This document shows, piece by piece, positions 45,501 through 64,000 of a stretch of 64,000 bases of DNA. The notes beneath the pieces were generated by a model. It saw nothing but the letters and a program-made list of their open reading frames with translations. It did not search any database and had not been told where the DNA came from. Made by a program: the position numbers and the translations under genes. The DNA lies in contig OZ296656.1 in NCBI GenBank assembly GCA_965655095.1, positions 76,694,001 to 76,758,000 of the forward strand, read 5' to 3'. Source of the stretch: Haplodiscus bocki. Taxonomy: Eukaryota. Every line of letters begins with the position of its first letter. Positions within the stretch are counted from its first letter, which is position 1.

Positions 45501-47660
45501 AAAGAAGCTATTGTCAAAGAACAACGTCCAGAAGTAAGAACTACCATTAAATGAAATTGAAGCAAGTCTTAAAGGAAGCAATGTCTTTGTAGTGAATCTG
45601 TCTCATCACTGACAGACTATTTGACACTTTTTGGCATTTGGTCCACTGACTGAGTCATTAAAGCGTCAAATCTGTCATGGTCTGTACACCTACATGGTAA
45701 ACAGGGGGGTTTAGGTCCACTCTAATTACAAAACCACTGAAAAACGGAATGAAGCGTAAAGGAGGGAAAAAGTGATAGAAGGAAGCTTCTCCTAGTAGCC
45801 TGTGTTCCTCACAGACAGACTCATAAGCAATTCAAAAAACATCATGAAAAAAATAGCACGACCGAGCGCCTTCCCTGTAGAAGAAATAAAACATCAACAC
45901 TCCAATTCACCTGAAATTGCATTGAAGTCTGACCTTTTAAACAACAACCACAGAAAAAAACTGTGCCTATATAACACGCTAATTTACTAAAAGTTGACTG
46001 AAAATAGTGTAAACATTCTTGAAAACACACGAGACTGTCAACGGCCGAGAGTAAAAGCTTATTTTGAGAAAAATACACTTACTTGAAGGCACTTCACCGT
46101 TGTCGCTTCGTTGTAGAAAAGTTTCAACAACAGTGAGATTGTAGCACTTATTGAATGCATGGCAAAAAAGTAATTCTCAAAGTAAGCAAATTGAAACTTC
46201 GGTATGACACATTTCTCCCTAAAAAACAACGATGACTTCTGCCGGAAAGATTCAACAGTTTATAATGATCAAAGGGCGACGGAAAAGACGTTAAGCATAA
46301 ACAAAAATACATTTGTAGAGAAAACATGCCCAGAATTGGCTATCCAATTGTTGTAAAACTTTGGATCCGATGAAAAATCCCAAATATCCCGCCATCTGGT
46401 AATTTTCGCCGTCGCCTCCACTGGGTGGTCCGGAACGTTTTTCAACCTCTCAGGCCGCCCGGGGAGGGACCCGGTAGCGGCACCCCCTGTGGGAAATCTT
46501 ACTTGTAATTTTTGGGTGGAAAAAAATACGATTTTGGAAATGAGCCTATAGAATTGGCTGAAATTTTGCATGTTTTTAGGTATGAGCAAGCTAATCAACA
46601 TTCCCTACTGGCGTTTTCCCGGATTTTTTCTTAAAGTTGGATTTTTTTGCCATTTTGTGACGTCAATTTCGCCTATTTTCCGTTTTTTGACGGTTTTTGG
46701 CCAAAAAGTCCAACTTCGTCCACACAACTAGTATTGCAAGTGGCTGCATGCGGAAAGTACGTCATTCGGTAGGAACAACCAGCTAAAGAAGACTGCTCTA
46801 CAACAATCTGACGTTGACTTATGATGTTTTGAAAATGGTCAAAAAAGGGTGTCAGAGAGGTGTTTTTCAGGTTTAGGGTCCCGTAACTCGTCACACACTG
46901 GTCGCAGCGGTTTCAAGGCGGTACTACCCCTTGTTGCCCATCCATAGGTCAACAAATGTTTAGCAGGGAAAAAGTCCACAAAACAAAGTGGGAAAAAGTT
47001 ATGACCCCTTTTTTGAAAAAAACCACACTTTTTCGAAATTTTGCTCATAAAATGCAATCTGGCGGCATTTTTTTCGTACAAACGGTATTGGTTCATTCTA
47101 AGTTGCAATAGTTAGCCCATTGGATGTAATTGGCTGGTGTGTTTTTGTGTTTCGAAAATTTTTCAATTTTTCGACATTTTTCAGGCCACGAATTTTGACC
47201 CACCTGACAAGATTTTCATGAGAATCGTTGTGATTTAACTGGCCATAACTTTTTTCTGGGGCACTTTATGGATTGGTACCAGCAGCTATAAAAAGCTCCC
47301 CTGGTAGGCAGCAAGGCGTATGTGAAGTTTCAAGTCTTTAGAAGCAGTTTTTCAGAAAGTCTGTGCTCTCAATTTTCAAAACTTCACTACCATTGAAAGT
47401 GGTTTTCAAAAATTTCAGATTTTTTCTATTTTGACAACATTTTATCTTCAGGTGTGGTTCAAATGAAGTTTCAGGACTTCCAAAGCAACGTCTACAGTAG
47501 TAGAAATTAAGCTCCTCAGAGTGACGCCGTTCCCATTCGTCCGCAGGGCAATGGGATCGGCGAACTCTTTCAAAACAAAAAGGTCAAAACTGAAATCTAC
47601 ACTCCGTTCCGGTAACCAGGTGGCCTATCGCCTGTAGCTGACGCAAACAATAGGCGGCCA

Positions 47661-47759
47661 GACTGATAAACAACGCTCCACGTGTCGTCGCACTCAGCCG
47701 GAACGAAGCGTGGCGAAGTGGAGGCAGTGCGACGACACGTGGAGTGTTGTTTATCAGTC
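47661..47759. repeat. 34-bp inverted repeat with 31-nt loop (one per unit; also 49095-49193, 50531-50629, 51967-52065)
   Basis: gactgataaacaac(a/g)ctccacgtgtcgtcgcact - cagccggaacgaagcgtggcgaagtggaggc - agtgcgacgacacgtggagtgttgtttatcagtc. Perfect in units 2 and 3; one G:T in units 1 and 4. Confidence 0.97.
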
Positions 47760-48958
47760 GGTTGTCAGTATTGTGTCAAAATATCTTGTATTTAACATAA
47801 AAAAGGTTTAAACACTCCTAACAACGGCCCTATTTTGACCTTAGCCTCCAGCGCTAGGTGGTCCGGAACGTTTTTCAACCTCTCAGGCCGCCCGGGGAGG
47901 GACCCGGTAGCGGCACCCCCTGTGGGAAATCTTACTTGTAATTTTTGGGTGGAAAAAAATACGATTTTGGAAATGAGCCTATAGAATTGGCTGAAATTTT
48001 GCATGTTTTTAGGTATGAGCAAGCTAATCAACATTCCCTACTGGCGTTTTCCCGGATTTTTTCTTAAAGTTGGATTTTTTTGCCATTTTGTGACGTCAAT
48101 TTCGCCTATTTTCCGTTTTTTGACGGTTTTTGGCCAAAAAGTCCAACTTCGTCCACACAACTAGTATTGCAAGTGGCTGCATGCGGAAAGTACGTCACTC
48201 GGTAGGAACAACCAGCTAAATAAGACTGCTCTACAACAATCTGACGTTGACTTATGATGTTTTGAAAATGGTCAAAAAAGGGTGTCAGAGAGGTGTTTTT
48301 CAGGTTTAGGGTCCCGTAACTCGTCACACACTGGTCGCAACGGTTTCAAGGCGGTACTACCCCTTGTTGCCCATCCATAGGTCAACAAATGTTTAGCAGG
48401 GAAAAAGTCCACAAAACAAAGTGGGAAAAAGTTATGACCCCTTTTTTGAAAAAAACCACACTTTTTCGAAATTTTGCTCATAAAATGCAATCTGGCGGCA
48501 TTTTTTTCGTACAAACGGTATTGGTTCGTTCTGTATTGCAATAGTTAGCCCATTGGATGTAATTGGCTGGTGTGTTTTTGTTTTTCGAAAAATTTTCATT
48601 TTTTCGACATTTTTCAGGCCACGAATTTTGACCCACCTGACAAGATTTTCATGAGAATCGTTGTGATTTAACTGGCCATAACTTTTTTCTGGGGCACTTT
48701 ATGGATTGGTACCAGCAGCTATAAATAGTTCTCCTAGTAGGCGGGAAGGCGTATGTGAAGTTTCAAGTCTTTAGAAGCAGTTTGTCAGAAAGACTATGCT
48801 CTCAATTTTCAAAACTTCACTACCATTGAAATTGGTTTTCAAAAATTTCAGATTTTTTTCTATTTTGACAACTTTTTATCTTCACGGGTGGTTCAAATGA
48901 AGCTGCAGGACTTCCAAAGCAACGCCTAGAACAGTAGAAATGAAGCCCCTCAGAGGGA

Positions 48959-48996
48959 CGCCGTTCCCATTCGTCCGCAGGGCAATGGGAACGGCG
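48959..48996. repeat. 13-bp hairpin capped by cc-GCA-gg (one per unit; also 47525-47562, 28003-28040)
   Basis: cgccgttcccatt-cgtccgcagggc-aatgggaacggcg. Confidence 0.9.
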
Positions 48997-51900
48997 AACT
49001 CTTTCAAAACAAAAAGGTCAAAATTGAAATCTTCACTCCGTTCCGGTACCCAGGTGGCCTTTCGCCAATCGCTCAAGCAAACCATTTGCTGCCAGACTGA
49101 TAAACAACACTCCACGTGTCGTCGCACTCAGCCGGAACGAAGCGTGGCGAAGTGGAGGCAGTGCGACGACACGTGGAGTGTTGTTTATCAGTCGGGTGTC
49201 AGTTTTGTAACAAAAATATCATTTAAATTATTATAGCAAAAGTTAAAATACTCTCAGACAACGGCCCTATTTTGACCTTAGCCTCCAGCGCTAGGTGGTC
49301 CGGAACTTTTTTCAACTTTTTCTGCCGCGCGGGGAGGGACCCGGTAGCGGCTTCCCTTATGGAAAACTTACTTTGGAAAAAACGCTGGAAAAAAATGCGA
49401 TTTTGGAAACGAGCCTATAGAATTGGCTGAAAATTTGCATGTTTTTAGGTATGAGCAAGCTAATCAACAATCCCTAGTGGCGTTTTGCCCAATTTTTTCT
49501 TAAAGTTGGATTTTTTGGCCATTTTGTGACGTCAAATTCGCCTATTTTCCATTTTTTGACGGTTTTTGGCCAAAAAGTCCAACTTCGTCCACACAACTAG
49601 GATTGCAAGTGGCTGCATGCGGAAAGTAAGTCAATCGGCGGGAACAACGAGCTAAAGAACGTTGCTCTACGACAACTTGACGTTGACTTATGATAATTTG
49701 AAAATGGTCAAAAATGGGTGTCAGAGAGGTGTTTTTCAGGTTTAGGTTCCCGTAACTCGTCACACACTGGTCGGAGCGGTTTCAAGGTGGTACTACCCCT
49801 TGTTGCCCATCCATAGGTCAACAAATGCTTAGCAGGAAAAAAGTCCCTAAAACAAAGTGGGAAGAAGTTATGACCACTTTTTTGGAAAAAACCACACTTT
49901 TTCGAAATTTTGGTCATAAAATGCAATCCGGCGGCATTTTTTTCGTACAAAAGATATTTGTTCATTCTGTATTGCAATAGTTAGCCCTTACAATGTAATT
50001 ACCTGGTGTGTTTTTGTTTTTCCAAAACTTTTCATTTTTTTGACATTTTTTGGGGCACGAAATTTGACCTACCTGACAACATTTTCATCAGAATCCTTGT
50101 GTTTCAACTGGCCATAACTTTTTTCTGGGGCACTTTACGGAATGTTACCAGCAGCCATAAATAGTTCCCCTGGTGCGCATCAACGAGTATGTGAAGTTTC
50201 AAGTCATTAGAAATAGTTTGTCAGGAAGAGGACGCGCTCAATTTTCAAAACTTCACCACCATTGAAAATGGTTTTCAAAAAATTCAGACTTTTCCATTTT
50301 TGACATTTTTTTTATCTTTACGGGTGGTTGAAATGAAGTTGCAGGACCTCCAAGACAACATCTAGAGTGCTTGAAAGGGAGTCACTCAGAGTGACGCCGT
50401 TCCCCTTCGTCCGCAGGGCAATGGGAACGGCGAACTCTTTCAAAACAAAAAGGTCAAAATTGAAAACATCACTCCGTTCCGGTAACGAGGTGGCCTATCG
50501 CCAGTAGCTCATGCAAACCATTGGCTGCCAGACTGATAAACAACACTCCACGTGTCGTCGCACTCAGCCGGAACGAAGCGTGGCGAAGTGGAGGCAGTGC
50601 GACGACACGTGGAGTGTTGTTTATCAGTCGGGTGTCAGTATTCTAACCAGAATATCAATGAAATTAACATAGAAGAAGCAAAAATACATCGTGACAACGG
50701 CCCTATTTTGACCTTAGCCTCCAGCGCTAGGTGGTCCGGAACGTTTTTCAACCTCTCAGGCCGCCCGGGGAGGGACCCGGTAGCGGCACCCCCTGTGGGA
50801 AATCTTACTTGTAATTTTTGGGTGGAAAAAAATACGATTTTGGAAATGAGCCTATAGAATTGGCTGAAATTTTGCATATTTTTAGGTATGAGCAAGCTAA
50901 TCAACATTCCCTACTGGCGTTTTCCCGGATTTTTTCTTAAAGTTGGATTTTTTTGCCATTTTGTGACGTCAATTTCGCCTATTTTCCGTTTTTTGACGGT
51001 TTTTGGCCAAAAAGTCCAACTTCGTCCACACAACTAGTATTGCAAGTGGCTGCATGCGGAAAGTACGTCATTCGGTAGGAACAACCAGCTAAAGAAGACT
51101 GCTCTACAACAATCTGACGTTGACTTATGATGTTTTGAAAATGGTCAAAAAAGGGTGTCAGAGAGGTGTTTTTCAGGTTTAGGGTCCCGTAACTCGTCAC
51201 ACACTGGTCGCAGCGGTTTCAAGGCGGTACTACCCCTTGTTGCCCATCCATAGGTCAACAAATGTTTAGCAGGGAAAAAGTCCACAAAACAAAGTGGGAA
51301 AAAGTTATGACCCCTTTTTTGAAAAAAACCACACTTTTTCGAAATTTTGCTCATAAAATGCAATCTGGCGGCATTTTTTTCGTACAAATGGTATTGGTTC
51401 ATTCTGTGTTGCAATAGTTAGCCCATTGGATGTAATTGGCTGGTGTGTTTTTGTGTTTCGAAAATTTTTCAATTTTTCGACATTTTTCAGGCCACGAATT
51501 TTGACCCACCTGACAAGATTTTCATGAGAATCGTTGTGATTTAACTGGCCATAACTTTTTTCTGGGGCACTTTATGGATTGGTACCAGCAGCTATAAAAA
51601 GCTCCCCTGGTAGGCGGCAACGCGTATGTGAAGTTTCAAGTCTTTAGAAGCAGTTTGTCAGAAAGTCTATGCTCTCAATTTTCAAAACTTCACTACCATT
51701 GAAATTGTTTTTCAAAAATTTCAGATTTTTTCTATTTTGACAACTTTTTATCTTCACGGGTGGCTCAAATGAAGTTGCATGACTTCCAAAGCAACGTCTA
51801 GAGTAGTAGAAGTTAAGCCCCTCAGAGTGACGCCGTTCCCATTCGTCCGCAGGGCAATGGGATCGGCGAACTCTTTCAAAACAAAAAGGTCAAAACTGAA

Positions 51901-52165
51901 ATCTACACTCCGTTCCGGTAACCAGGTGGCCTATCGCCTGTAGCTGACGCAAACAATAGGCGGCCAGACTGATAAACAACGCTCCACGTGTCGTCGCACT
52001 CAGCCGGAACGAAGCGTGGCGAAGTGGAGGCAGTGCGACGACACGTGGAGTGTTGTTTATCAGTCGGGTGTCAGTTTTGTAACAAAAATATCATTTAAAT
52101 TATTATAGCAAAAGTTAAAATACTACCAGACAACGGCCCTATTTTGACCTTAGCCTCCAGCGCTA

Positions 52166-53200
52166 GGTGGTCCGGGCCTCCCCCAACCTCATCCGGCCGC
52201 CTGGGGAGGGTCCCAGAGCCGGCCCCCTCTTTCTGAATTTTGATAGGTGATTTTTTGAGGATATAATTGCGATTTTGGAAACTAACCCTACGATTTTTCT
52301 AATTTTTTGCATACGGCTAGGTATGACAGATCTAAGAACTAATCCCTACTGGCGTTTTCCCGAATTTTTGACTGATGTTGATTTTTTGGCATTTTTTTGG
52401 TGCAAAAATGACGTTTTTTCGAAAAATTGGCAGTTTTTCGTCCCAAAGTCCATTTTCTTCCACACAACTAGATTAGCAAGTGCGGGCATGCAGAAAGTAC
52501 GTCAACTGGTGAGAAGAATAAGCACTAGAACGTTGGTCTACGACAAGTTGACGTGGACTTATGATAATTTGAATGTGTGCAAAAAACGTGCGAGAAGAGA
52601 CATTTCCAAATATAACGTCACATAACTCGATAACGATCATGTTTCGCGGTCCAGCATAAGAGTGCTTTTTTGTTGCCAGTCTATAGCGGAACAAATGTTG
52701 TGGAGAAAAAGTTCCTGAGAAAATTCTATGAAAAAAGTTATAACCGTTTTTTTGGGCGAAAAATCGATTTTTTCGAAATTTTTTGCAAAATAGTCGAAGT
52801 GATTGCATTTTTTCGCAAACACAGATATGGAGACCACCATAATCGCATTAGGCAGCCCAAGGGCGGCACTACACCAGGGTTAGACAGTTTTTTCAAAATT
52901 ATTTTCAAGACTTTGATTTTTTCGGCCGTCAATTTTGTCTCGAGAGAGAAAAAACAAAAAAGACAATTTCGTCCAAAACACACCATAACTTCTTTCAGAG
53001 ACTTTTTAGAGGAGTAGATAACCCTTACAAAAGTCCATGACACATACATTTCACGTCCCATGCATTTTTTGAGTTTTTGTTAACCAATGCAAAGAAAGTT
53101 GATTGACATGAAATTTTGATAATTTCTATCTTCGAACTTTCACTTGTTTCGTCTACAGAAATTAATGACAGAGCTCATACAAGTTTCAGTGATTTTTTCC
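52166..53200. repeat. Strongly diverged fifth unit of the 1435-bp array
   Basis: Collinear blocks: gattttggaaa, atccctactggcgttttccc, ccacacaactag, gcatgc.gaaagtacgtca, acaaatg, aaaaagttat, ccataactt. Neither large hairpin is present. Confidence 0.8.
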
Positions 53201-54887: not shown

Positions 54888-57800
54888 ATGCCCAACAAAT
54901 CGAGTCGAAGTAGAAAGAGAATACTCTCCGATAAGTGTAAAGGTTGCGGTAGAATCAAATCATCTGAAACTTGTGCCTTCTGTCTATCCCGACTGCAATG
55001 TTCCCCTGATCCTGATGTCTTTGAGATATCCGTTTGTACAACTGAGACTGATGACAGCGAGAGCCCTGTTAATTACCCAGATGAAGTTTGTTGTTATGCT
55101 TGCCGAAGGATATCAACCAAATATCACCACTTGGACTTTCAATTGGTCCATGGTATTTATATTTGTAATCGTCAAAAATTCAGACCGGCAAAAACAACAG
55201 AAATTGTTCCCTTGTGTCAAACTTGTAATATCTACCTTAACCCGGAAGCTGAAGCTTTTGCTACAACAGCCACGTTTAAACATGCCTGGCCTTGTGTTTT
55301 TTGGTATATCCTTTCAACTGAGGACGTCTCAATTAATTTTTGGCAATACATTCCCATAGAAATGAGGAGCAGTTGGATCAATAAAACCGCCTTGAGTAAT
55401 ATTGTTTTCTGGAGTAGGATGGAATTAGTGAGCGTCCCAGTTTTTGCTGACCTGACCAACCGGAGGCAGCACTTCCATAAATTTAAGCAACAGTGGCTCC
55501 TGAATGACATGGTTAAAAGTGTTAATGAAGAGTATTTTCCCTGCGTCAAATGTCCAGTTGGTTGCGAGGAGTTCATCGACGAGTGTGGTTCAATTAGTTT
55601 TGTTCACTATCTCGGAAAAATAGTTCCCAATTTCAATAACTTTGAAACAAACCCCAACGATTTTTTACGAGGTATCAGAAGTGACTATGAATTAACTGAC
55701 TACCTGTTTGACTCGGATCCCAGATCCCCTTTCAAGAAACCTAGTATTGTTATTGATAACACAGGAATATCCATTCTAACTTGTAGGGATCATGATAAGA
55801 AAGTAAAAGATTACTACTTACATGTACCTAGGCATCCGTCAGGCCGTGTTTTCAACCCTCTGGCTGATCGATTTGCACCCGCCGTTTTGAGCACACGAGT
55901 AAGGAAACCTTTTCAAGAAAATTTCTCAACGGCTTCCTATAAGATGCTTCAACTAAACCATTCTTTTTCGGGAATTAATACTTGTTTTTTATCGGTGCAA
56001 CGGAATTTTGATAGAGTTACCGACGAAAGCATCGAACATGAGTCTTTTTATTTACATACCAGGAAAGATACAGAAATTGTGCTGAAGAAACTCGTCCAAA
56101 ACGGTTCGCTTAGTCAAAAAATAGGTGAGGCCATTCTGAAAAACCGCAATGAACGGTGGCTCGCACAAAATGAACAATTCCTCAACCACACTAATTTTGT
56201 TCCTTTGGAGACAGTAAGTTTCATTCGCTACATTAATCAATATCCTAACATCAACCCAATGACTACCATTGAGGAGCAGGAGGAGGAAGAGGTGGAGCAG
56301 GAATCCCTGGGTGATGAAAGCAGCGGTTACATTGAGGACGTTGACCATCAAGCGCCATGCGGCATAGATTACTCACAAGAGTCACCTTCTGGAACTTCTG
56401 TGGTTGAAAGTGCGGACACCTCAGGTTCAAACACCCTCCAGGAAGCAAACTTTTGTCAACAGGAACTCTTACAACGCATTGTATTTCCTTGTGTGAAACC
56501 GCTAGATAGAACTTTGGGGGCGCCTCCAAAAACGTTTGTGGTAGGATCAGATTCAGCTAAAATTTTGATTGACATGTCAGCCAACTCCGTCCTTTTCATG
56601 AGTAATGTGCTCCAAGCTTCGTTACGAAAACATGGTTTCTCTTGGAAACTTTCGGATTGTTTCCATGTTAAAAAAGGAAAAACGTTCAAACAATCCTTTG
56701 CTACAGCCCTACAAAATTTACGACATGAAATTGACGAGATTTCCATGTACGAAATTTTGTCCAAACTGCCTTTTGCTAACGTAGCCACAATAGAAAATCG
56801 ACAGAGTTCATTAGGATTCTCGAATATTGCCCCGGAAAAAGATTTTCAGGTCTATGTCAGTACTTGTCACCGAAATAGATCACTGCTTGCGCCAGAAGAA
56901 AGCTTCAATACATCATCAGGTTTGTTTCGTCTTGTGTACGTTGTGGCTGATTCACCAGTCAATAAGACATTTTTCCGATACAAGTTTTGTGAAGAGTGGT
57001 GGGATGTCTCTTCACCAGGTAGATCAAAAAAGACCTGTCAAAAACACCTTTCTTCTTTGATTTCTAACAACGCTTGGAAAGCTTTGATATACGAGAAAAT
57101 GGATTCAGATTTAAGCCAACAAGAACGTGATCGCAATGTAACCAGTGTTTTTGGTCAAGATAAAGTCTTCTGCGATAATCATGCTCTTCCCCTGTCATGT
57201 GATTTCCCGAAAAATTCTTATGTTTGTCAGTTTGATGAAAGTTGCTACCGAAAATCGGCGTGGAGATGTCCCTCTGAAAATTGTGAGAGCGCTCTCTGTA
57301 AAAGCCACTTTGAGGAAATCAATGAAAAATCTGTTGTAGTTCCACACAGCGGCAAAAATTCTTCCGCCGACAACGATGATGAGATGTCCACCGTTGAAGT
57401 TGAGGAAGTTACGGACAACGAACTTGATGGTTTAGAAACTGAAAACATTGCTCTCCTGGAAATGCCTACCGACGCCGGTTTCGTGGACGACGTTCAGCTT
57501 CAGCAGACTGATGCTGGTGCCGAGTCTGTACATTTTCACTCTAATGACGATTTGCACGCAGTTGGAAGCCACGTTATATTGAATGCGGTTTGTGCGTTGC
57601 TAAATCGACCCCGGAACCCTACCAATTTCCGTAAAAAAGAATGGCGTTTCCTGCAGTCCTTCGTTGCTAAATGTCCCGGTGAGTCAGTCCCATTGACTTT
57701 TCCTGAGGCAGCCCTTCTGCCGTCAATTTATTATATAATGGCCGAGCAATCAATCTGTGGGGCCGTCCCAGCCCCTCTTTTTTCTCCCTCGCTTTCCAAA

Positions 57801-60800
57801 AGGTTCAATTTCGCTGACATAATATCTCATATCAAAAATCGTTTAAAGGATTTTAGTCTTCTCACATCCACTGACCCACGAGTTATCCAATTCTATTTCG
57901 ATTGTTTCTTGAATTTTCAAGCTCAATACTGCGATACGCGATTCGTTTTGAACAGAGGTCTGCAAGAGTTTCGCTCACAAGAGTCCGAAAAAAGTGAGGC
58001 TCGGGTTAGAATGAATGAAGAAGACAGCCGCAAAGTAGTCAATGAGTTAGCTGCTGCAATTCGCTCGGAAGAGCCAACCTTTTTTCTGACATTCACTCTT
58101 AACCAATCGAGAATGTTTGGCGTGGCTCCTCTGTACCGCCTAGTCGAAAAGAATGTTAGAAACTTAAGTGCCTCCAAGCGAAAAAACATCATAGAGGGTT
58201 TTATGCCGCTATACATGAGACTTTGGGAACGAGCAGCTACTTTTTTCATAAAGTACTTGGAAAAGTCAACTGAAAAACCTTTAGGTACTATCAAAAACAT
58301 TTTCCCCAGGTTTGAGTTCCAGACGTCTAAGGGCAATGCTCCGCATTTGCATGTAATTATTTGGACGACTGAAAGCAAAAATGATCCTGTGATACAAAAA
58401 AAGATAGTTGGATCTTTTCGACAGCTGCTGCAGGAGTTACAAATGGAGATGCAGGATCCATCAAATAACATTGTGCAAAATGAGAAAGATGCTGATGACC
58501 TTGTTCAGTTAGCGCGGGCCACGTTAAGTCATACTTGCGAGCGTGCTGGTTTCAGATGCCATAAAAAATGTGACAACAGTGGGAACATGGTCTGCCGCTT
58601 CAAAGTTTTCGATCCATGCTTTCAGACGTTCTTCAAAGCAATTGATAGGCCGCATTCGAATGAGGTTTGGGACTTGCTGAAAAGCTTAAACTTAGCAAAG
58701 TTAGTTGAAGGTTTTCATGCCGGTTATGAAATTTGCCAAGAACTGCAAGGTGGTAGGTATAACTACGCCGCAGACTTTGGTGAAACCTTTTCACCTGTCA
58801 TAACCAAACTGTTCACTGTGATTCAAGCTAGCATGAATTCTCTACTTTGCGACCGAGTTATGTCGGCAACGTATCTCGCCAAATATGCGGCGGGCGTGGA
58901 GGAGCACGCTACTGTTCAAATCAGTGGAGAATCTAATGACACAGTATCGGTGAGCGTGAAGAAAATGAAAAATATAAAAATCGCGGGGGCTCAAATTGCA
59001 GCCAAAACTGACGAAGAAAAAACATCGAGTAACAACAATTGTAGAATTTTGTCATCCACTGAGTGTATTTGGTCTATTTTGGATTTGAAATACGTTTTCC
59101 CCACTTATGTTTGTGTGCATGTCAACACGCTTCCACTCGAGAATCGCGGAGGTATCGTACGAAAAAAATCTTATGTGCGACAGGTGGATAGACCTGGTCA
59201 GCATGATCAGGCGTTGGCGCTCGTAAAAATCAGACAGTTGAAGCAGTTTGAAGACAATCGGCTTTTTACGAAAACCCAAGAGAAAACTTTACGCGAATCC
59301 CATGATTCGCGTTTGAGCATTGATAAGGTTTCCCTCTTCGCTGTCAGGCCTCCTGAGCTGCTTTTCATTCGTGACATAGAATTTTATTTTCGGCATTTTT
59401 CGTTTGAGAAAATTAGTTTTCGTTCGGCAATTGATTGCGTTAAATCTTCGCTGCATGAAAGTTGTTGGGTGGATGGTGTTGGTCATTTGATAAGATTGCG
59501 ATCAGACAGTCTTCCCAATTTCATGACATTTCTTTCCGAAAATCGTCAGGATTCAAACCCTAGATATTCTTTTTTCGCATCTTTCTACGAAAAACGTTTC
59601 TCATCCCGAAGTTGCGTCAACTTTTTGTCGGATGAAAGAGATGGTTTTAAGAAACCTGCGGTTGTAGTGTTCCCTAATGTTATTCCGAAACACGCTCCTA
59701 ATTTTTTAATTAACTTCTTGCTGCAGTTTGGCAAGTACGAAACAGAATTTGACTTGTATAACAGTGCACTCTTGACTGTCGCATACGAGAAAGCAGGTTT
59801 ACTGGAGGACTCCACCAACGTGACTCAGGAAGATCTGAATAAACTTTTGAAAAAATTCATTTTGCGCCGCGTTGTTTTCGTCCCTGGCTCGCATGTTTCG
59901 CAGGATAGACAAATACTCGAAGCAAAAGCTGCTTTCAGCTTACTCATGGATTGCCCTGAGAACCTGGACACTCCCACTATCATTTACAACGCTTTGCGAG
60001 ATGAATGCTCCCAGGAACTTCAGAACGCTATTAATAACAAATTTTGTGCTGTGGCGTCACAGCTCTACTCTTTAGTACAAGATTCGGCGAAACCTGACAT
60101 CGAGTCGATACTCAATAAACAGGCAAGCGATCCCCTTCGTTACAATCCCCTGTGTTCCAACGATATCAAATTCAACGAAGAACAAAAAGTAGTTCTGGAA
60201 AGTTTACTGAGAACCCTTGATACTTTCGTGAGCTCTGCTCCTCGATTTTTTCGATTCCAGTTTGTGGTAGGGATGCCAGGTTCTGGGAAAACGTTTGTTA
60301 TTGTACATGCACTCCTTTATGCTTTGTGTATCGGACTTGACGTAATGGTTACCTCACTGAGTAGTGAACGGGCGATGCAATTCTCCGGTGTTCATATACA
60401 CGAACTTTTTGGTCTTCCGGTCGCTAAACGTTTGATCGTTGATGAAATCGCTGAAAACGCTCTGAAAAAACTTAATTGTGATCCTATTCGAACAACAGTT
60501 CTTAGGAGGATAGATATCCTGTATTTCGAAGAGATAGGTATGGTCTCGGCCGAAGAATTTGCGGCGATTGACTTGATCATGCAAAAGGTACGAGACAATT
60601 ACTCGCCTTTCGGCGGAGTTTTGGTGCTTGGAACCGGTGATCCGAAGCAACTTCCGCCACCGCAAGGTCGATTGCTCTGGACATCCCCAATCATACTTAC
60701 AAGCGTTACAATGCACGCCTTAGAGAAATGCGTTCGGATGGTTGACGTTGTCGGTCGCGAGTTTTTGAATATTTTGTCAAGTCCAAAAATTACCGAAACC

Positions 60801-62063
60801 GAAATGGAGATTTTGATGACAACTTTCTCAGATGAATGTAATTTTTGCGAACTCGACAACAGCCCTATGGACGCAGTTCGGATTTTTGGAACCAGGGCCG
60901 CGGAGAGTAAAGCTATTGAAACTCAAATCGACAGGGTTAGACGGTCTGGATCAAAAGTAATTGAAATATTAAGTTGCGACGAAGTGAAAACTAACCCCAG
61001 TAGCAATTGGAAACCGGTTGCAAAGCATTACTCCAAGGTACTAAACAAGCTCTGTCTAGAGCCCGAGGTTTTATATTGTTATCAGGATGCGTTACTCCGG
61101 ATCACCGTCAATATTCCGAGTCAAAATGTGTCGCAGGGGCAAATGTGTGTATTCAAAAAATTTGATGGTGTCAAAAAAATAACAGTGATTGTTGCTCTTC
61201 CCGGTGTAAGGAAGCTACCTCCATGTAATTCCAATGGCAGTTACCTCTTCGAGGAAAACGGTTGGTTCGAAATTACTTTAACAAAGCAAGCCGGTTTCGT
61301 TCATGGCCATAAGGGGTCATCTATTAGGAGATCTCAGTTTCCACTGAAAAATTTTATGGCAATGACAATACACAAAGCAATGGGCGAGACCATTGGTAAA
61401 ATTGTCACGAAAATTGATTGCGTAGATCGGGCCTATAATTTGTGGGAGAAAGAGCAGCTTTACGTTCTTGTTAGTAGAGTCCAAAATCTGAAAGACATAA
61501 CGTTTTTAGGTGACAAGAATACAACCCTTTTGTCGATCAAAAATTTGTTAGGTAAGTCTTCTCAGTGGGACGATTACACGGAAAGATTAGTTCGAACAGC
61601 AAGTAATCAAGATAATGCCGTGTTCGACATGGCAGCGTTATCGCCGTTTAGACCTCGGAAAATTGAGCTTCCTGTCGGAGAAGTTGGATTTGTCTACCTG
61701 CTTGTTAGTACTCGGAATATAAGTGCGTGTTACGTTGGCGAAACAAGTAATTTGCGCAGACGTCTTTTGGAACACAATTCCGGTAAAGGAGCTTTTTTCA
61801 CGAATCAGAGTCATTTAAGGCCTTGGGGTGTAATGTGTTTTGCTACCGGTTTCAGTGACTGTCCTCAATCGAACCGAAAAGAGCGAAAGCACCTGGAGCA
61901 AAAAATTCATGACAATTTTTTTCAAAATTTCAACGCGTTCAACCGTCAAGGATCACCTTCTGAAGTTCTTCAGATTTTTCTGTCGTGCGTATCAGAACAT
62001 AAGTCTCAGGTCTGTGGTTTGCGTGCAGTTATAACCGGAAAAATTCTCAGCCGACAGAGCTAG
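54888..62063 (+). CDS. Intact Helitron/Helentron-like Rep-helicase with C-terminal SLX1-like GIY-YIG nuclease (~2390 aa)
   Basis: Rep motif 1 PTFFLTFT (58074), HUH RFEFQTSKGNAPHLH (His 58344/58350), Y2 motif YLAKY (58872-58886). PIF1 motifs GMPGSGKT (60270), EEIGMV, PFGG..GDPKQLPP, RSQFPL..MTIHK, QLYV..SR. GIY-YIG GFVYLL...YVG..RR..EHN.G...RPW...GF (from 61686). Confidence 0.95.
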   Translation: MPNKSSRSRKRILSDKCKGCGRIKSSETCAFCLSRLQCSPDPDVFEISVCTTETDDSESPVNYPDEVCCYACRRISTKYHHLDFQLVHGIYICNRQKFRPAKTTEIVPLCQTCNIYLNPEAEAFATTATFKHAWPCVFWYILSTEDVSINFWQYIPIEMRSSWINKTALSNIVFWSRMELVSVPVFADLTNRRQHFHKFKQQWLLNDMVKSVNEEYFPCVKCPVGCEEFIDECGSISFVHYLGKIVPNFNNFETNPNDFLRGIRSDYELTDYLFDSDPRSPFKKPSIVIDNTGISILTCRDHDKKVKDYYLHVPRHPSGRVFNPLADRFAPAVLSTRVRKPFQENFSTASYKMLQLNHSFSGINTCFLSVQRNFDRVTDESIEHESFYLHTRKDTEIVLKKLVQNGSLSQKIGEAILKNRNERWLAQNEQFLNHTNFVPLETVSFIRYINQYPNINPMTTIEEQEEEEVEQESLGDESSGYIEDVDHQAPCGIDYSQESPSGTSVVESADTSGSNTLQEANFCQQELLQRIVFPCVKPLDRTLGAPPKTFVVGSDSAKILIDMSANSVLFMSNVLQASLRKHGFSWKLSDCFHVKKGKTFKQSFATALQNLRHEIDEISMYEILSKLPFANVATIENRQSSLGFSNIAPEKDFQVYVSTCHRNRSLLAPEESFNTSSGLFRLVYVVADSPVNKTFFRYKFCEEWWDVSSPGRSKKTCQKHLSSLISNNAWKALIYEKMDSDLSQQERDRNVTSVFGQDKVFCDNHALPLSCDFPKNSYVCQFDESCYRKSAWRCPSENCESALCKSHFEEINEKSVVVPHSGKNSSADNDDEMSTVEVEEVTDNELDGLETENIALLEMPTDAGFVDDVQLQQTDAGAESVHFHSNDDLHAVGSHVILNAVCALLNRPRNPTNFRKKEWRFLQSFVAKCPGESVPLTFPEAALLPSIYYIMAEQSICGAVPAPLFSPSLSKRFNFADIISHIKNRLKDFSLLTSTDPRVIQFYFDCFLNFQAQYCDTRFVLNRGLQEFRSQESEKSEARVRMNEEDSRKVVNELAAAIRSEEPTFFLTFTLNQSRMFGVAPLYRLVEKNVRNLSASKRKNIIEGFMPLYMRLWERAATFFIKYLEKSTEKPLGTIKNIFPRFEFQTSKGNAPHLHVIIWTTESKNDPVIQKKIVGSFRQLLQELQMEMQDPSNNIVQNEKDADDLVQLARATLSHTCERAGFRCHKKCDNSGNMVCRFKVFDPCFQTFFKAIDRPHSNEVWDLLKSLNLAKLVEGFHAGYEICQELQGGRYNYAADFGETFSPVITKLFTVIQASMNSLLCDRVMSATYLAKYAAGVEEHATVQISGESNDTVSVSVKKMKNIKIAGAQIAAKTDEEKTSSNNNCRILSSTECIWSILDLKYVFPTYVCVHVNTLPLENRGGIVRKKSYVRQVDRPGQHDQALALVKIRQLKQFEDNRLFTKTQEKTLRESHDSRLSIDKVSLFAVRPPELLFIRDIEFYFRHFSFEKISFRSAIDCVKSSLHESCWVDGVGHLIRLRSDSLPNFMTFLSENRQDSNPRYSFFASFYEKRFSSRSCVNFLSDERDGFKKPAVVVFPNVIPKHAPNFLINFLLQFGKYETEFDLYNSALLTVAYEKAGLLEDSTNVTQEDLNKLLKKFILRRVVFVPGSHVSQDRQILEAKAAFSLLMDCPENLDTPTIIYNALRDECSQELQNAINNKFCAVASQLYSLVQDSAKPDIESILNKQASDPLRYNPLCSNDIKFNEEQKVVLESLLRTLDTFVSSAPRFFRFQFVVGMPGSGKTFVIVHALLYALCIGLDVMVTSLSSERAMQFSGVHIHELFGLPVAKRLIVDEIAENALKKLNCDPIRTTVLRRIDILYFEEIGMVSAEEFAAIDLIMQKVRDNYSPFGGVLVLGTGDPKQLPPPQGRLLWTSPIILTSVTMHALEKCVRMVDVVGREFLNILSSPKITETEMEILMTTFSDECNFCELDNSPMDAVRIFGTRAAESKAIETQIDRVRRSGSKVIEILSCDEVKTNPSSNWKPVAKHYSKVLNKLCLEPEVLYCYQDALLRITVNIPSQNVSQGQMCVFKKFDGVKKITVIVALPGVRKLPPCNSNGSYLFEENGWFEITLTKQAGFVHGHKGSSIRRSQFPLKNFMAMTIHKAMGETIGKIVTKIDCVDRAYNLWEKEQLYVLVSRVQNLKDITFLGDKNTTLLSIKNLLGKSSQWDDYTERLVRTASNQDNAVFDMAALSPFRPRKIELPVGEVGFVYLLVSTRNISACYVGETSNLRRRLLEHNSGKGAFFTNQSHLRPWGVMCFATGFSDCPQSNRKERKHLEQKIHDNFFQNFNAFNRQGSPSEVLQIFLSCVSEHKSQVCGLRAVITGKILSRQS

Positions 62064-62163
62064 AGTTGTGTAAATACTTGCTTTTCTTCATACACCGTGG
62101 AGTGGAGTAGGAAGCGACCTTCTAGGATGAACTGCGACATGTGAGTATGAGGCACTGCACAAT

Positions 62164-62461
62164 GTTCTACTCCCATAGTGAACTTGTGCTGTTTCTCTAC
62201 ACTTCACCAAAACCTAAATGTGCAGCGGGACGTTCTACTGGGATAGTGAACTCCTGCTGTTTTAATCATCTAAGACCTGTTCGAATTTTCTGAAAGCACA
62301 AAGTTCTACTTGGATAGTGAACTTGTGTTTCAAAGATCAACTTTTAGTGTAGTGAATTTAATTAAGGCTTTTTCCTCCTAATGTCACTAGAAGTCAACAT
62401 GTGAACCAAAAAGGTAGTTACAGAGAAAAGACAAAAGCACAGTTCTACTTCCATAGTGAAC
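62164..62461 (+). repeat. Four iterated imperfect-palindromic 20-mers GTTCTACT-N3-ATAGTGAAC downstream of RepHel
   Basis: Copies at 62164-62183, 62232-62251, 62303-62322 and 62442-62461. Confidence 0.9.
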
Positions 62462-62494
62462 GTGTAATATTTTGACATGAAAAGTATATGATCC

Positions 62495-62780
62495 CTACCG
62501 GTTGAATCAGTATTGCTGTTTCCATTAATAAATGTGTTTTTAAGACTTTAAACTTTGACATTTAAATTTGTAAAAAGAATTTGAAAATCAGCTCTTGTGT
62601 ATCATCTTGTTTCTCTGCAGCTTCTAGAAGTACCTTATCCATACCGTTGGAATCAATATTGCTGTTTCTATTAGTAAATTTGTTATTAAAACTTGAATCT
62701 TTGACATTTAGACTTGTAAAAAGAATTTGAAATTCAGCTCTTGTCTTTCAACTTATCTCTCTGCAGCTTCTGATAAGTGC
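62495..62780. repeat. Two diverged tandem copies of a ~147-bp unit
   Basis: tacc.....aatca.tattgctgttt at 62495 and 62642; shared ctttgacattta, tgtaaaaagaatttgaaa and ctctgcagcttct. Confidence 0.9.
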
Positions 62781-62819
62781 TCGTTAGATTATTGTTTTGT
62801 TTGAAATCCATAAATTTTG

Positions 62820-62962
62820 AAAGGGCAATGACAAAGCGTAATTATAATACTTCTTCTGTCAAAAGTTTTCCGAGCGTTATCATTTGAAAAGTTCATTTTG
62901 CCATCATTTCGTGCCCGCACTTGCCTTTATTGGCAATGTGCGGGCTCCTTTCATTGCCCTTT
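62820..62962. mobile_element. Mini element or terminus: 12-bp inverted repeats enclosing a GC-rich hairpin
   Basis: aaagggcaatga (62820-62831) / tcattgcccttt (62951-62962); hairpin gcccgcac-ttgcc-tttatt-ggcaa(t)gtgcgggc (62913-62945). Confidence 0.5.
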
Positions 62963-63640
62963 ACAGTAATTAAATTTACTTGAAATAATAGTATGCTTGA
63001 TTATGATGTTTTTCTTAATGGAGAATTAAAAAGGCTTAAGAAACTGACGACTTCATTGACATGTCTTCGATGGTGATCAGGTGACAGTCAATTTCACTTA
63101 ATTATAGTAGTGAAAACTTCAAGACTTATCTCAAATTTTTACAAATTTTGTACTTAATTGTGAATTTGAAATGGATACAAACTATGATAATTGAGTTTCC
63201 CTTTTTTCCAGCTTTTTTGTCCCACTAGAAGGTTTTCGTTTGCGTCTGCTGACAAGCTTCAAACATTTCAGCTCACTGAATTTCCGGGAGGTTTTTTACT
63301 GTTTATCTCTTAAGAGGACAAGCTTGAGAACGCCCAATTTCGAAATTTTGGGAGCGCTCACATTGTAAACAGCTTTCCTTTCATTTCCATCGGCAAATTA
63401 TCAGTTTTTTCTTGAAACTAGTGCTAATTTTTTTGGACAGTTGCATGGATTCTTTCCGTAGTTCTAATCTAATGCAAACAGCAAGTTTTACAATTCGTTG
63501 AAGATTGTTTTCCGAAGCGTTTGAAGAATCGGTGTTTAAATCGTAGATTCCGTTGAAGCGACACTTGAAAAATTAAACGCTTGTAAAAAATCGGCGGAGT
63601 TTGTTTGTAACACTTGACCATTTCAGACTTCCAAATAATA

Positions 63641-64000
63641 ATGAACTCCGCTTTTCCCAGCTCCCTGAATCCCGTTGCCGCCAGAGCATTGGCCGAAAAT
63701 TTTGAAGAGATAACTTTTTCCGATTTCTGCTCGGGCAATGATTGCGAAGATAAAAAACTTTACCTGATCTATTTGCACGGCAAGCGCTCAGCGGAGCCTC
63801 TGAAATATCGACAGTCGACATCTGCCCGAACAATAGTGCCGTTTAAGAACAAACTTCAACAGACGAATTATGATCGGTTCTTTCTGTTAGGAGATCCCAA
63901 GTCAAATCGGGTTGTTGCCCTGTTCAGCTCAAATGACAAAGAAAGTCGAATTTTGACACGCTATCATACAGAGATACACCCAGGAAAAGTTGTGGCTATC
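63641..64000 (+). CDS. Uncharacterised ORF truncated by the window edge (possibly OB-fold-like), not in the ORF track
   Basis: 120 open codons from ATG 63641: MNSAFPSSLNPVAARALAENFEEITFSDFCSGNDCEDKKLYLIYLHGKRSAEPLKYRQSTSARTIVPFKNKLQQTNYDRFFLLGDPKSNRVVALFSSNDKESRILTRYHTEIHPGKVVAI. Preceded by acceptor-like catttcag (63626). Confidence 0.6.
   Translation, partial: MNSAFPSSLNPVAARALAENFEEITFSDFCSGNDCEDKKLYLIYLHGKRSAEPLKYRQSTSARTIVPFKNKLQQTNYDRFFLLGDPKSNRVVALFSSNDKESRILTRYHTEIHPGKVVAI

What the first reader, a model, noticed from the sequence alone, without database searches (positions are those of the whole stretch)
46424..64000. Candidate multi-gene rolling-circle system: hairpin array + SGNH hydrolase + RepHel-GIY-YIG + iterons + third ORF
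Seen: in one orientation, a 6.8-kb structured tandem array, an intact SGNH ORF, an intact RepHel, repeated 20-mers and a further open ORF, whereas the other TE coding regions here are decayed. Known: SGNH and OTU domains accompany some Helentrons, and Helitrons can form tandem arrays. Inference: this is one large (>17 kb) autonomous element, and the array holds origins or substrates for its Rep and nuclease.
Basis: partly seen in the sequence, partly recalled or inferred. Interest (0 to 1): 0.8.

Follow-up and report, generated by a model that had tools for sequence, protein, structure and literature searches.

The report
Helitron-like transposon chain with GIY-YIG nuclease
The region is not one giant element but a head-to-tail chain of rolling-circle (Helitron-like) transposons: four 1.4-kb gene-less copies followed by an intact 13.4-kb three-gene copy whose transposase carries an unusual GIY-YIG nuclease. 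The way the chain is built suggests that these elements insert right next to each other's ends.

Summary
There is a 1.43-kb tandem array, an intact SGNH-like ORF, an intact 2,391-aa Rep-helicase-GIY-YIG ORF, four repeated hairpin motifs and a third ORF, all on the + strand.

The interpretation as one element of more than 17 kb is wrong. A 99.3% identical second copy (L001) shares only window 52167 onward. Upstream of it lies a different 1,054-bp array.

The autonomous element is 13,409 bp (52167 to about 65575, 1.6 kb past the window). It starts with GTGG plus a conserved hairpin and ends in CTAG.

The array is four separate non-autonomous elements (46425-52166) with the same kind of ends. Their first 1,087 bp are 98% identical to a sister autonomous family (L002) and only about 70% to this one. 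Neighbouring units are less alike than units on other contigs, so the chain grew by repeated insertion, not by local duplication.

ORF1 folds as an SGNH hydrolase. ORF3 is probably an RPA-like OB-fold ssDNA binder, on a low-confidence model. The GIY-YIG domain is SLX1-like.

The Rep-helicase core is homologous to Helentron transposases (hhalign probability 100%). All 18 sampled clade members carry GIY-YIG and none gave an AP-endonuclease Pfam match.

Verdict: a recently active new variant of Helitron-like elements. Insertion at resident 3' ends is inferred, not shown.

The parts
46376..46424 (+). Solo 3'-end-like (RTS, 'type II') remnant ...CTGGTAATTTTCGCCGTCGCCTCCACTGG that precedes the first unit. 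No recognisable element body lies upstream.
   Evidence: Aligns with the 3' ends of the 1054-bp units of L001 and the 1033-bp units of L004. The upstream 3.8 kb has no match to any fetched locus.
46425..47857 (+). Non-autonomous unit U1 (1433 bp), from GTGG to CTAG.
47858..49294 (+). Non-autonomous unit U2 (1437 bp).
49295..50730 (+). Non-autonomous unit U3 (1436 bp). It belongs to a different subfamily: 88-89% identical to its neighbours but 92% to L002 units.
50731..52166 (+). Non-autonomous unit U4 (1436 bp). It is 99% identical to a unit on another contig (L002).
51964..52068 (+). Long hairpin (37-nt arms, 95% complementary) about 95 nt before the 3' end of U4. The same hairpin is present in every unit.
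52167..64000 (+). Autonomous element, 13,409 bp in full. It continues about 1,575 bp beyond the window and ends in ...GCCTCCAGCGCTAG.
   Evidence: L001 copy is 99.25-99.5% identical. The end lies at L008 11935, which equals window coordinate 65575.
52167..52235 (+). 5'-end module (LTS): GTGGTCC..., then a hairpin with a GGG/CCC stem and an NAGGGN loop 40 nt after the CTAGGTGG junction motif.
   Evidence: Of 44 occurrences of the hairpin motif, 42 have CTRGGTGG 39-50 nt upstream, across the window and six loci. The fourth stem pair covaries: CG 9, GC 4, UA 2, AU 1.
53702..54310 (+). ORF1, 202 aa, SGNH/GDSL-type hydrolase.
   Evidence: Motifs GDS, G, GGN(x)ND and DxxH are conserved in the alignment. 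AF2 model pLDDT 75. Best full-length Foldseek matches are PAF-AH Ib, GDSL esterases, PatB and OatA, with TM up to 0.60. No Pfam hit.
54888..62063 (+). RepHel-GIY-YIG transposase, 2391 aa, intact.
58026..59140 (+). HUH Rep domain. HUH (PHLHVIIW) lies at about 58344-58352 and the two tyrosines (YLAKY) at about 58872-58886.
   Evidence: H1156, H1158, Y1332 and K1335 are invariant in 18 relatives. They align with the HUH and Tyr motifs of Helentron proteins.
60171..61478 (+). Pif1-type SF1B helicase (Walker A GMPGSGKT).
   Evidence: Pfam PIF1 2.6e-12. PDB Pif1 and Helraiser helicase matches.
61686..61930 (+). C-terminal GIY-YIG nuclease, SLX1/URI-like.
   Evidence: Pfam GIY-YIG 4.3e-07, found in 18 of 18 relatives. 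The family profile matches SLX1 structures at 2e-12.
62157..62466 (+). The core GTTCTACTnnnATAGTGAAC is constant and the outer stems covary.
   Evidence: z -2.4 to -5.1. Identical in L001, absent from other families.
62482..62771 (+). 146-bp tandem repeat, 1.9 copies.
   Evidence: Also present in L001.
63642..64000 (+). ORF3, first 119 of 346 codons. Probable RPA-like OB-fold ssDNA-binding protein with a Cys4 cluster.

Best explanation
Window 46425-64000 is a head-to-tail chain of rolling-circle (Helitron-like) transposons.

Composition (shown):
- Four 1.43-kb non-autonomous elements are followed by one intact 13.4-kb autonomous element. The chain continues beyond the window with three more non-autonomous elements and another RepHel gene.
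- Every element starts with GTGG(T/C)C and, about 36-46 nt further on, a GC hairpin with loop NAGGGN. This is the left terminal sequence (LTS).
- Every element ends in CTAG or CTGG, preceded by a family-specific right terminal sequence (RTS).
- The autonomous element encodes an SGNH-type hydrolase, then a 2,391-aa protein, then ORF3.
- The 2,391-aa protein has a Cys/His-rich N-terminal region, an HUH/Y2 Rep, a Pif1 helicase and an SLX1-like GIY-YIG nuclease.
- ORF3 is a probable RPA-like ssDNA binder.

Mechanism (inferred):
- Rep nicks at the GTGG 5' end and the helicase peels off the + strand up to the CTRG 3' end.
- ORF3 coats the single strand.
- The released unit re-enters the genome directly 3' of the RTS of a resident copy.
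- That would explain why mixed families and subfamilies stack into chains.
- The GIY-YIG domain takes the place of the Helentron AP-endonuclease as the target or second-strand nuclease.
- The gene-less 1.05-1.44-kb units keep only the LTS and RTS and are mobilised in trans.
For: Boundaries:
- L001 is 99.25% identical from window 52147 to 64000 but has a different array upstream.
- The window's own contig (L008) shows the element ending at CTAG, 13,409 bp after the GTGG.
- In L007 a sister element ends ...GCCTGCAGCGCTAG and is followed by unrelated DNA, which places CTAG in the RTS and GTGG in the LTS.
- A 1,421-bp derivative consists of the first 842 bp (93.8%) and the last 35 bp (100%) of this element.
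- The 1435-bp unit (U1435) is 98% identical to the L002-type element over its first 1087 bp.

End signals:
- The hairpin motif occurs 44 times in the window and the loci examined. In 42 of them CTRGGTGG lies 39-50 nt upstream; the other two have one-base variants.
- These occurrences span two assemblies and RepHel families down to 33% identity.
- The hairpin shows covariation.

Chain built by insertion:
- U4 is 99% identical to a unit on another contig but 89% to its neighbour U3.
- The order of subfamilies differs between loci.
- L001, L006 and L008 have chains of unrelated unit families.

Proteins:
- Pfam PIF1 and GIY-YIG match.
- hhalign against Helentron-type proteins gives probability 100%, E 7e-54, over 1113 columns that include the HUH and YxxxY motifs.
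- Helitron_like_N matches 10 of 18 relatives and GIY-YIG 18 of 18.
- The GIY-YIG domain is SLX1-like.
- ORF1 has an SGNH fold and motifs.
- The ORF3 model matches RPA, Teb1, CST, LEF-3 and MCM10 OB folds.
- The three genes are syntenic in L002 and L007, and ORF3 is also present in L003 and L006.

Recent activity: the two copies differ at 84 of 11,836 positions. One is intact and the other has a single premature stop at codon 812.
Against: - No empty site, target-site footprint or circular junction was available. The exact nick positions and the end-targeted insertion are inferred.
- The RTS/LTS split rests on one chain end (L007) and one deletion derivative.
- The window protein itself does not reach the Pfam Helitron_like_N threshold. 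A family profile matches the bat Helitron Helraiser only in the helicase.
- The ORF3 model has pLDDT 60 and TM scores of 0.2-0.3. Profile searches find no Pfam or PDB relative.
- ORF1 has no Pfam hit.
- SGNH was not detected next to the more distant RepHel relatives (L004, L005, L006).
- The Styela relative lacks the end module.
- The first 20 nt or so after GTGG differ between the two 99% identical copies. This is unexplained.
- The source organism is unknown.
Confidence: 0.8

Rival explanations
1. Array, SGNH, RepHel, iterons and ORF3 form one composite autonomous element of more than 17 kb, and the array is its internal set of origins.
For: All parts share one orientation and are contiguous. 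The sister locus L002 also has 1435-bp units directly upstream of its RepHel element.
Against: L001, 99.3% identical, lacks the array and has a different one instead. Each unit has its own complete GTGG...CTAG ends. Units are closer to units on other contigs than to their neighbours. The same units also lie downstream of the element.
Confidence: 0.04
2. The elements are as described, but the chains come from rolling-circle read-through. Concatemers or bypass of the 3' signal would carry neighbours along, followed by unequal recombination. There would be no end-targeted insertion.
For: Tandem Helitron arrays are attributed to rolling-circle concatemers in the literature (bioRxiv 10.1101/2024.11.21.624632; PMC12001565). 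Runs of the same unit family occur (window U1, U2; L002 dn1, dn2 at 94%). 3'-end bypass is a known Helitron behaviour (PMC6431247).
Against: Adjacent units are often of different subfamilies or unrelated families, and their order differs between loci. Concatemers of one circle would give near-identical neighbours. Chain starts show only a short RTS remnant before the first LTS.
Confidence: 0.3
3. The 1.4-kb arrays are ordinary satellite DNA, and RepHel elements merely tend to land in or near it.
For: The genome has many arrays with 1.0-1.4 kb periods.
Against: Units are deletion derivatives of autonomous elements: 98% over 1087 bp in one case, and 93.8% over 842 bp plus the last 35 bp in another. 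Otherwise unrelated unit families share the same LTS hairpin module and CTRG ends across two assemblies. Autonomous elements sit in register, not inside units.
Confidence: 0.04

Closest known systems
Helentrons (HLE2 Helitron-like elements with a C-terminal AP endonuclease; Poulter 2003; Thomas 2014; HELIANO paper PMC11417382)
   Same: The Rep-Pif1 helicase core is homologous over 1113 aligned columns. A nuclease is fused after the helicase. An OTU domain is present in some relatives (4 of 18). Both have short non-autonomous partners and are associated with tandem repeats.
   Different: The nuclease is an SLX1-like GIY-YIG, not an AP endonuclease (0 of 18 relatives gave an Exo_endo_phos Pfam match). 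There is no Pfam DUF6570 hit, which is the HLE2 marker per PMC11417382. Ends are GTGG...CTRG, with no 12-16-nt terminal inverted repeats. Whole elements, not internal minisatellites, are in tandem.
Canonical Helitrons (HLE1; Helraiser, PDB 7LCC)
   Same: Both have an HUH/Y2 Rep plus Pif1 helicase and a 3' end of CTRR type (CTAG/CTGG here) with upstream hairpins. RPA-like accessory genes are known in Helitrons (PMC6431247). Gene-less derivatives and tandem arrays are also known.
   Different: There is no 5' TC. The family profile matches Helraiser only in the helicase. It also differs by a roughly 1000-aa Cys/His-rich N-terminus, the GIY-YIG domain, the SGNH gene and the conserved 5' hairpin module.
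HelenSM92, an HLE2 family of the moss Sphagnum magellanicum reported to carry a GIY-YIG domain (PMC11417382)
   Same: It is the only description found of GIY-YIG together with RepHel.
   Different: It is a plant element, described there as a captured domain. The present clade is in animal-type genomes (named relatives are from Styela clava and Hyalella azteca) and has the domain fused in all 18 members sampled.
Bacterial HUH elements that insert next to a sequence resembling their own end (IS200/IS605, IS91/ISCR). From my own knowledge.
   Same: They use single-strand HUH chemistry and end hairpins as recognition signals. Insertion is directed to a short sequence related to the element end, which can give tandem copies.
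   Different: The proteins are unrelated in architecture (Y1 or Y2 without a fused helicase or nuclease) and the hosts are prokaryotes. End-targeting here is only inferred.
Terminons / Penelope-like retroelements (PMC6431247)
   Same: The accessory repertoire is the same: GIY-YIG nuclease and GDSL/SGNH esterase in large eukaryotic mobile elements that form head-to-tail arrays.
   Different: They are based on reverse transcriptase and lie at telomeres, with no RepHel transposase. The resemblance is one of accessory modules only.

Membership tests
Helitron-like elements (RepHel superfamily) | HUH motif and two catalytic tyrosines in a Rep domain | tested here: met
   PHLHVIIW and YLAKY. H1156, H1158, Y1332 and K1335 are invariant and Y1336 is nearly invariant in 18 relatives. 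They align to the Helentron HUH and Tyr motifs.
Helitron-like elements (RepHel superfamily) | Pif1-type SF1B helicase fused C-terminal to Rep | tested here: met
   Pfam PIF1 2.6e-12. PDB Pif1 matches at 1e-11 to 3e-23 and Helraiser helicase at 7e-16 with the family profile.
Helitron-like elements (RepHel superfamily) | Match to Pfam Helitron_like_N | tested here: inconclusive
   No hit for the window protein at E<=0.01. 10 of 18 relatives hit, best 1.6e-07; P0012 scores 30.5 bits against a cut-off of 28.9. hhalign to Helentron-type proteins covers this domain.
Helitron-like elements (RepHel superfamily) | No target-site duplication; insertion at a fixed dinucleotide (AT or TT) | not testable with these tools
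   No empty site was available. The only element-to-host junction seen is CTAG|ATTG.
Helentron (HLE2 with endonuclease) | C-terminal apurinic/apyrimidinic endonuclease (Exo_endo_phos) | tested here: not met
   GIY-YIG is present instead in 18 of 18 relatives and Exo_endo_phos in none. Genuine Helentron proteins P0047 and P0049 do show it.
Helentron / HLE2 | DUF6570 domain upstream of Rep (HLE2 marker per PMC11417382) | tested here: not met
   No Pfam DUF6570 hit in any of 18 relatives at E<=0.01. P0047, P0049 and P0051 have it at 1e-19 to 2e-23. The hhalign match starts only after that region.
Helentron / HLE2 | 12-16-nt terminal inverted repeats, with a stem-loop after the right repeat | tested here: not met
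   The ends are GTGGTCC... and ...GCCTCCAGCGCTAG. Only a 5-bp complementarity (CCTCC/GGTGG) spans the junction.
Canonical Helitron (HLE1) | 5' TC and 3' CTRR with a hairpin 10-12 nt upstream | tested here: inconclusive
   The 3' CTAG/CTGG fits CTRR. GC hairpins lie upstream of CTAG in several unit families. The 5' end is GTGG, not TC.
GIY-YIG nucleases, SLX1/URI branch | GIY and YIG tyrosines, the Arg, and the His-Asn of the URI core | tested here: met
   GFVYLL...CYVGET..RRRLLEHNSG. Y2273, Y2285, G2287, H2299 and N2300 are invariant. Pfam 4.3e-07. The profile matches SLX1 structures at 2e-12. Catalysis was not tested.
SGNH/GDSL hydrolases (ORF1) | Blocks I (GDS), II (G), III (GxND) and V (DxxH) on a flavodoxin-like fold | tested here: met
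   IIGDSLLR, PGAR, YGGNAVND and DEVHLS are conserved in relatives. AF2 pLDDT 75. Foldseek matches PAF-AH Ib, GDSL esterases, PatB and OatA at TM 0.5-0.6. There is no Pfam or PDB sequence hit.
RPA-like OB-fold ssDNA-binding proteins (ORF3) | Tandem OB folds, one with an inserted zinc ribbon | tested here: inconclusive
   C191, C196 and C206 are invariant and C208 is nearly invariant in 56 relatives. The top Foldseek hits are RPA, Teb1, CST, LEF-3 and MCM10, with probability up to 1.0. However, the model has pLDDT 60 and TM 0.2-0.3. No Pfam or PDB sequence or profile hit was found.

The most novel reading that the evidence does not exclude
This clade of Helitron-like elements integrates site-specifically at the 3' terminus (CTRG) of resident relatives. 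Rep, perhaps with the SLX1-like GIY-YIG nuclease, would treat a resident right end as the target. Elements of different families then stack head-to-tail into chains. This 'end-homing' mode would differ from the AT/TT dinucleotide targeting of known Helitrons and Helentrons. It would also be a direct route from transposons to kilobase-period satellite arrays.
Probability: 0.35. Interest if true: 0.8.

Novelty: new variant of a known kind. Interest (0 to 1): 0.6.

Why it matters
Helitron-like elements are currently sorted into Helitrons and Helentron/Helitron2 types. The fused nuclease, when present, is an AP endonuclease. Here a whole clade has an SLX1-like GIY-YIG nuclease in that position. 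I sampled 18 of the 51 related proteins that were found, among them predicted proteins from a tunicate and an amphipod, and all 18 carry it. The clade also has its own end signals and conserved SGNH and RPA-like partner genes.

In the searchable literature I found only one passing mention of GIY-YIG with RepHel, in a moss.

The window holds an intact copy, and a second copy lies 0.7% away. That makes it a candidate active element for biochemical study of how a rolling-circle transposase cooperates with a second nuclease.

The mixed head-to-tail chains give a concrete, testable case for how transposons seed long-period tandem arrays.

Tried and rejected
- Rfam (gathering threshold) and tRNA scans of the window found nothing, so the array is not an RNA-gene array.
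- TRF cannot see the array because its period exceeds 500.
- Pfam gave nothing for ORF1, ORF3 or their L002 counterparts, even at E<=5. The RepHel N-terminal 1050 aa gave only sub-threshold matches to two domains of unknown function.
- PDB sequence searches for ORF1 and ORF3 found nothing.
- A 56-sequence ORF3 profile against PDB found nothing.
- Ten distant ORF3 relatives have no Pfam domain.
- Thermodynamic z-scores of the 141-nt junction regions are not significant. The case for the 5' hairpin rests on conservation and covariation instead.
- The region upstream of the array (42.6-46.4 kb) matches none of the fetched loci, so the origin of the solo RTS-like 45-mer is unexplained.
- The iteron motif is absent from sister families, so it is not a clade-wide Rep-binding site.
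- The end module was not found in the Styela clava locus.
- I did not place the clade on a tree against HLE1 because no HLE1 sequence was available by reference.
- The SGNH-like gene of L003 appears spliced.

Full report
OBSERVATION

The window is AT-rich eukaryote-like DNA with GC 0.36-0.43. Direct-repeat analysis shows copies spaced 1433-1437 bp apart from 46383 to about 52600. TRF misses them because the period exceeds 500.

The ORF table shows the following:
- a 206-codon ORF at 53690-54310 (202 aa from its ATG at 53702);
- one continuous frame at 54879-62063 (2391 aa from the ATG at 54888);
- an ORF starting at 63642 that runs off the window.

Four 32-nt repeats with the core GTTCTACTnnnATAGTGAAC lie at 62157-62466. 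0.17 matches are expected by chance and 0 of 100 shuffles reach four. A 146-bp repeat of 1.9 copies follows. No Rfam family or tRNA is present.

THE BIG PROTEIN

- Pfam finds PIF1 (aa 1765-1927, 2.6e-12) and GIY-YIG (aa 2270-2327, 4.3e-07), but not Helitron_like_N.
- The word search found 51 relatives. Most have PIF1 plus GIY-YIG and many also have Helitron_like_N. Named examples are predicted proteins of Styela clava and Hyalella azteca. Classical Helentron proteins (OTU, DUF6570, Helitron_like_N, PIF1, AP endonuclease) appear only at E around 1e-7.
- In an alignment of 18 relatives, the HUH histidines (H1156, H1158), Y1332/K1335 of YLAKY, the Walker A motif and the GIY-YIG core (Y2273, Y2285, G2287, H2299, N2300) are invariant.
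- Scanning all 18 gave GIY-YIG in 18, PIF1 in 17, Helitron_like_N in 10, OTU in 4, and no AP endonuclease or DUF6570.
- Profile-profile comparison with nine Helentron-type proteins gives probability 100%, E 7e-54, over 1113 columns running from before Rep through HUH, YxxxY and the helicase.
- Against PDB, the family profile matches Pif1 helicases, Helraiser (helicase part only, 7e-16) and SLX1 nucleases (2e-12).

The protein is therefore a divergent Helitron-like RepHel with an SLX1-type GIY-YIG nuclease where Helentrons carry an AP endonuclease. It also has a roughly 1000-aa Cys/His-rich N-terminal region without known domains.

BOUNDARIES

Locus L001 is in the same ENA assembly (ERZ26859043). 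It holds a copy 99.25% identical to window 52147-64000 and nothing of the array. Upstream of it is a 1054-bp tandem array and downstream a 1426-bp tandem array.

The window's own contig continues in L008 (window coordinate = L008 + 53640). There the element ends ...GCCTCCAGCGCTAG at L008 11935, which is window coordinate 65575.

In L007 (assembly ERZ25074608, RepHel 63% identical) the element ends ...GCCTGCAGCGCTAG and is followed by unrelated DNA (ATTGATG...). So CTAG belongs to the right end, and the GTGG that follows it in chains belongs to the next element's left end.

A 1,421-bp element in L008 consists of the first 842 bp (93.8%) and the last 35 bp (100%) of the autonomous element, with unrelated DNA between. 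This confirms both ends.

The autonomous element is thus 52167 to about 65575, or 13,409 bp. The array is four separate units: 46425-47857, 47858-49294, 49295-50730 and 50731-52166.

THE UNITS

The 1435-bp unit (U1435) is 98% identical over its first 1087 bp to the 5' region of the L002-type autonomous element (RepHel 61-64% identical to the window's). It shares that element's last 35 nt or so. So it is a deletion derivative of the sister family.

Each unit has a hairpin with 37-nt arms about 95 nt before its 3' end.

Pairwise identities show that U4 is 99% identical to a unit in L002 but 89% to its neighbour U3. U3 is closest (92%) to other L002 units. The order of subfamilies differs between loci. 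Local tandem duplication does not explain this. Repeated insertion does.

Chains of unrelated unit families occur in several places:
- L001 has four 1054-bp units, then the autonomous element, then at least four 1426-bp units.
- L006 has alternating units of about 1270 and 1400 bp on both sides of a RepHel that is only about 32% identical to the window's.
- L008 has two U1435 units, the 1,421-bp derivative and another unit, then a third RepHel of the clade.

The window has a second short chain at 26.88-29.4 kb and a decayed RepHel-GIY-YIG on the minus strand at 34.5-42.6 kb.

END SIGNALS

A search for the loop motif GGGnAGGGnCC(C/T) alone gave 44 hits on the element strand in the window, L001, L002, L004, L006, L007 and L008. 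In 42 of them CTRGGTGG lies 39-50 nt upstream. The other two have one-base variants, CTAGGTGC and CTTGGTGG.

The hairpin keeps a GGG/CCC stem. Its fourth pair covaries (CG 9, GC 4, UA 2, AU 1, one broken). The covariation score is 0.31 against 0.08 in shuffles, with 0 of 500 shuffles as high. Slid controls are lower. Overall folding energies of the junction regions are not better than shuffles.

Right ends are family-specific but always end in CTAG or CTGG. Several have GC hairpins upstream.

The module is conserved between two assemblies and between RepHel families only 33% identical. It was not found at the Styela locus.

Every left end seen is preceded by a right end. At the start of the window array only a 45-nt right-end-like remnant is present (46376-46424), with no recognisable body upstream.

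ACCESSORY GENES

ORF1 has the SGNH blocks GDS, G, GGN(x)ND and DxxH. These are conserved in L002 (31% identity, E 7e-28) and in L007. Its AF2 model (pLDDT 75, pTM 0.76) best matches PAF-AH Ib, GDSL esterases and the SGNH O-acetyltransferases PatB and OatA, with TM up to 0.60. In L003 the homologue lies downstream of ORF3 and appears to contain an intron.

ORF3 (346 aa) is 53% identical in L002, 73% in L007, 42% in L003 and about 27% in L006. It always lies downstream of RepHel. Its family has 368 representative clusters at E<=1e-3 in the 1.84-billion-protein library. None of the ten scanned has a Pfam domain. C191, C196 and C206 are invariant and C208 is nearly invariant. The AF2 model is weak (pLDDT 60). 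Its best Foldseek matches are all multi-OB ssDNA binders (RPA, Teb1, CST, LEF-3, MCM10), with probability up to 1.0 but TM only 0.2-0.3. No sequence-level link to PDB was found. An RPA-like role is likely but not established.

THE 'ITERONS'

Each of the four repeats folds into a stem-loop (z -2.4 to -5.1). The inner stem is constant and the outer stems are compensated. They are identical in L001 and absent from other families. Those families carry different repeated palindromes at the same place after the RepHel stop. Their role is open: a strand-synthesis signal, a transcript end or a protein-binding site.

ACTIVITY

The window and L001 copies differ at 84 of 11,836 positions. The density is three times higher in the first 1.5 kb. 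The L001 RepHel has a single premature stop at codon 812, while the window copy is intact.

MECHANISM

Shown:
- the element limits;
- the shared end modules;
- the derivative relationship between units and autonomous elements;
- gene content and synteny;
- the homology of Rep-Hel to Helentron proteins.

Inferred:
- Rep nicks at CTRG|GTGG.
- The helicase unwinds the + strand and ORF3 coats it.
- The released unit is joined directly 3' of a resident right end, giving chains.
- GIY-YIG supplies the target or second-strand nick that the AP endonuclease is thought to supply in Helentrons.
- Non-autonomous units are mobilised in trans.

Whether the window's Rep acts on the neighbouring U1435 units is untested. 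Their partner by sequence is the L002 family, although the right ends and loop motifs are nearly the same.

The main rival for chain formation is rolling-circle concatemers or 3'-end bypass plus recombination. That is the usual explanation of Helitron arrays in the literature. It fits runs of like units but not the interleaving of subfamilies and families.

COMPARISON AND NOVELTY

Full-text searches found GIY-YIG together with RepHel only as one moss HLE2 family said to have captured the domain (PMC11417382). Tandem Helitron arrays, SGNH/GDSL accessory genes (in Terminons) and RPA-like genes in Helitrons are known.

The element fails three Helentron/HLE2 criteria: the AP endonuclease, a DUF6570 hit and 12-16-nt terminal inverted repeats. 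It also lacks the HLE1 5' TC, while its 3' CTRG fits CTRR.

I file it as a new variant of Helitron-like elements. It is neither a member of the Helentrons proper nor a new kind of system. Repbase could not be consulted, so prior curation there cannot be excluded.

HOUSEKEEPING

Noticed in passing
window 34540-42595 (minus strand): A second RepHel-GIY-YIG gene of the same clade (26-36% aa identity to the intact one) is broken into six ORF pieces. No ORF1 or ORF3 homologue and no end module was detected next to it.
   Followed up: partly
window 26884-29400: A second short head-to-tail chain: a U1435-like unit (82% identity, 27138-28180) followed by a unit related to the 1054-bp family of L001. 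Each has the CTAGGTGG-hairpin module (at 26884 and 28348).
   Followed up: partly
L008 11936-21041 (window's own contig beyond coordinate 64000): After the autonomous element the chain continues. It has two U1435-type units, a 1,421-bp deletion derivative of the window-type element and one more unit. A third RepHel gene of the clade (27% identical in the N-terminal region) follows.
   Followed up: partly
window 46376-46424: A 45-nt sequence nearly identical to the right ends of 1.05-kb unit families of L001 and of L004 (a different assembly) sits alone before the first array unit. The 3.8 kb upstream matches nothing fetched.
   Followed up: partly
L001, L002, L004, L006, L008: All non-autonomous unit families seen are 1.03-1.44 kb long, although their internal sequences are unrelated. 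This hints at a size preference.
   Followed up: no
L003 22080-22891: In a family 48% identical in RepHel (other assembly), the SGNH-like gene lies downstream of ORF3 instead of upstream of RepHel. It seems to contain an intron and starts SDS instead of GDS.
   Followed up: partly
window 52167-53701 vs L001 4783-6318: The two 99% identical copies differ three times more often in the first 1.5 kb (1.9 against about 0.55 differences per 100 bp). They are quite different in the 20 nt right after GTGG.
   Followed up: no
ORF3 family (P0054-P0213): ORF3 belongs to an unannotated protein family with 368 representative clusters at E<=1e-3. Three cysteines are invariant and a fourth nearly invariant, and there is no Pfam model.
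   Followed up: partly
window 13584-13643 and 15628-15666: Two short tandem repeats (20 bp x 3 and 17 bp x 2.3), unrelated to the finding.
   Followed up: no
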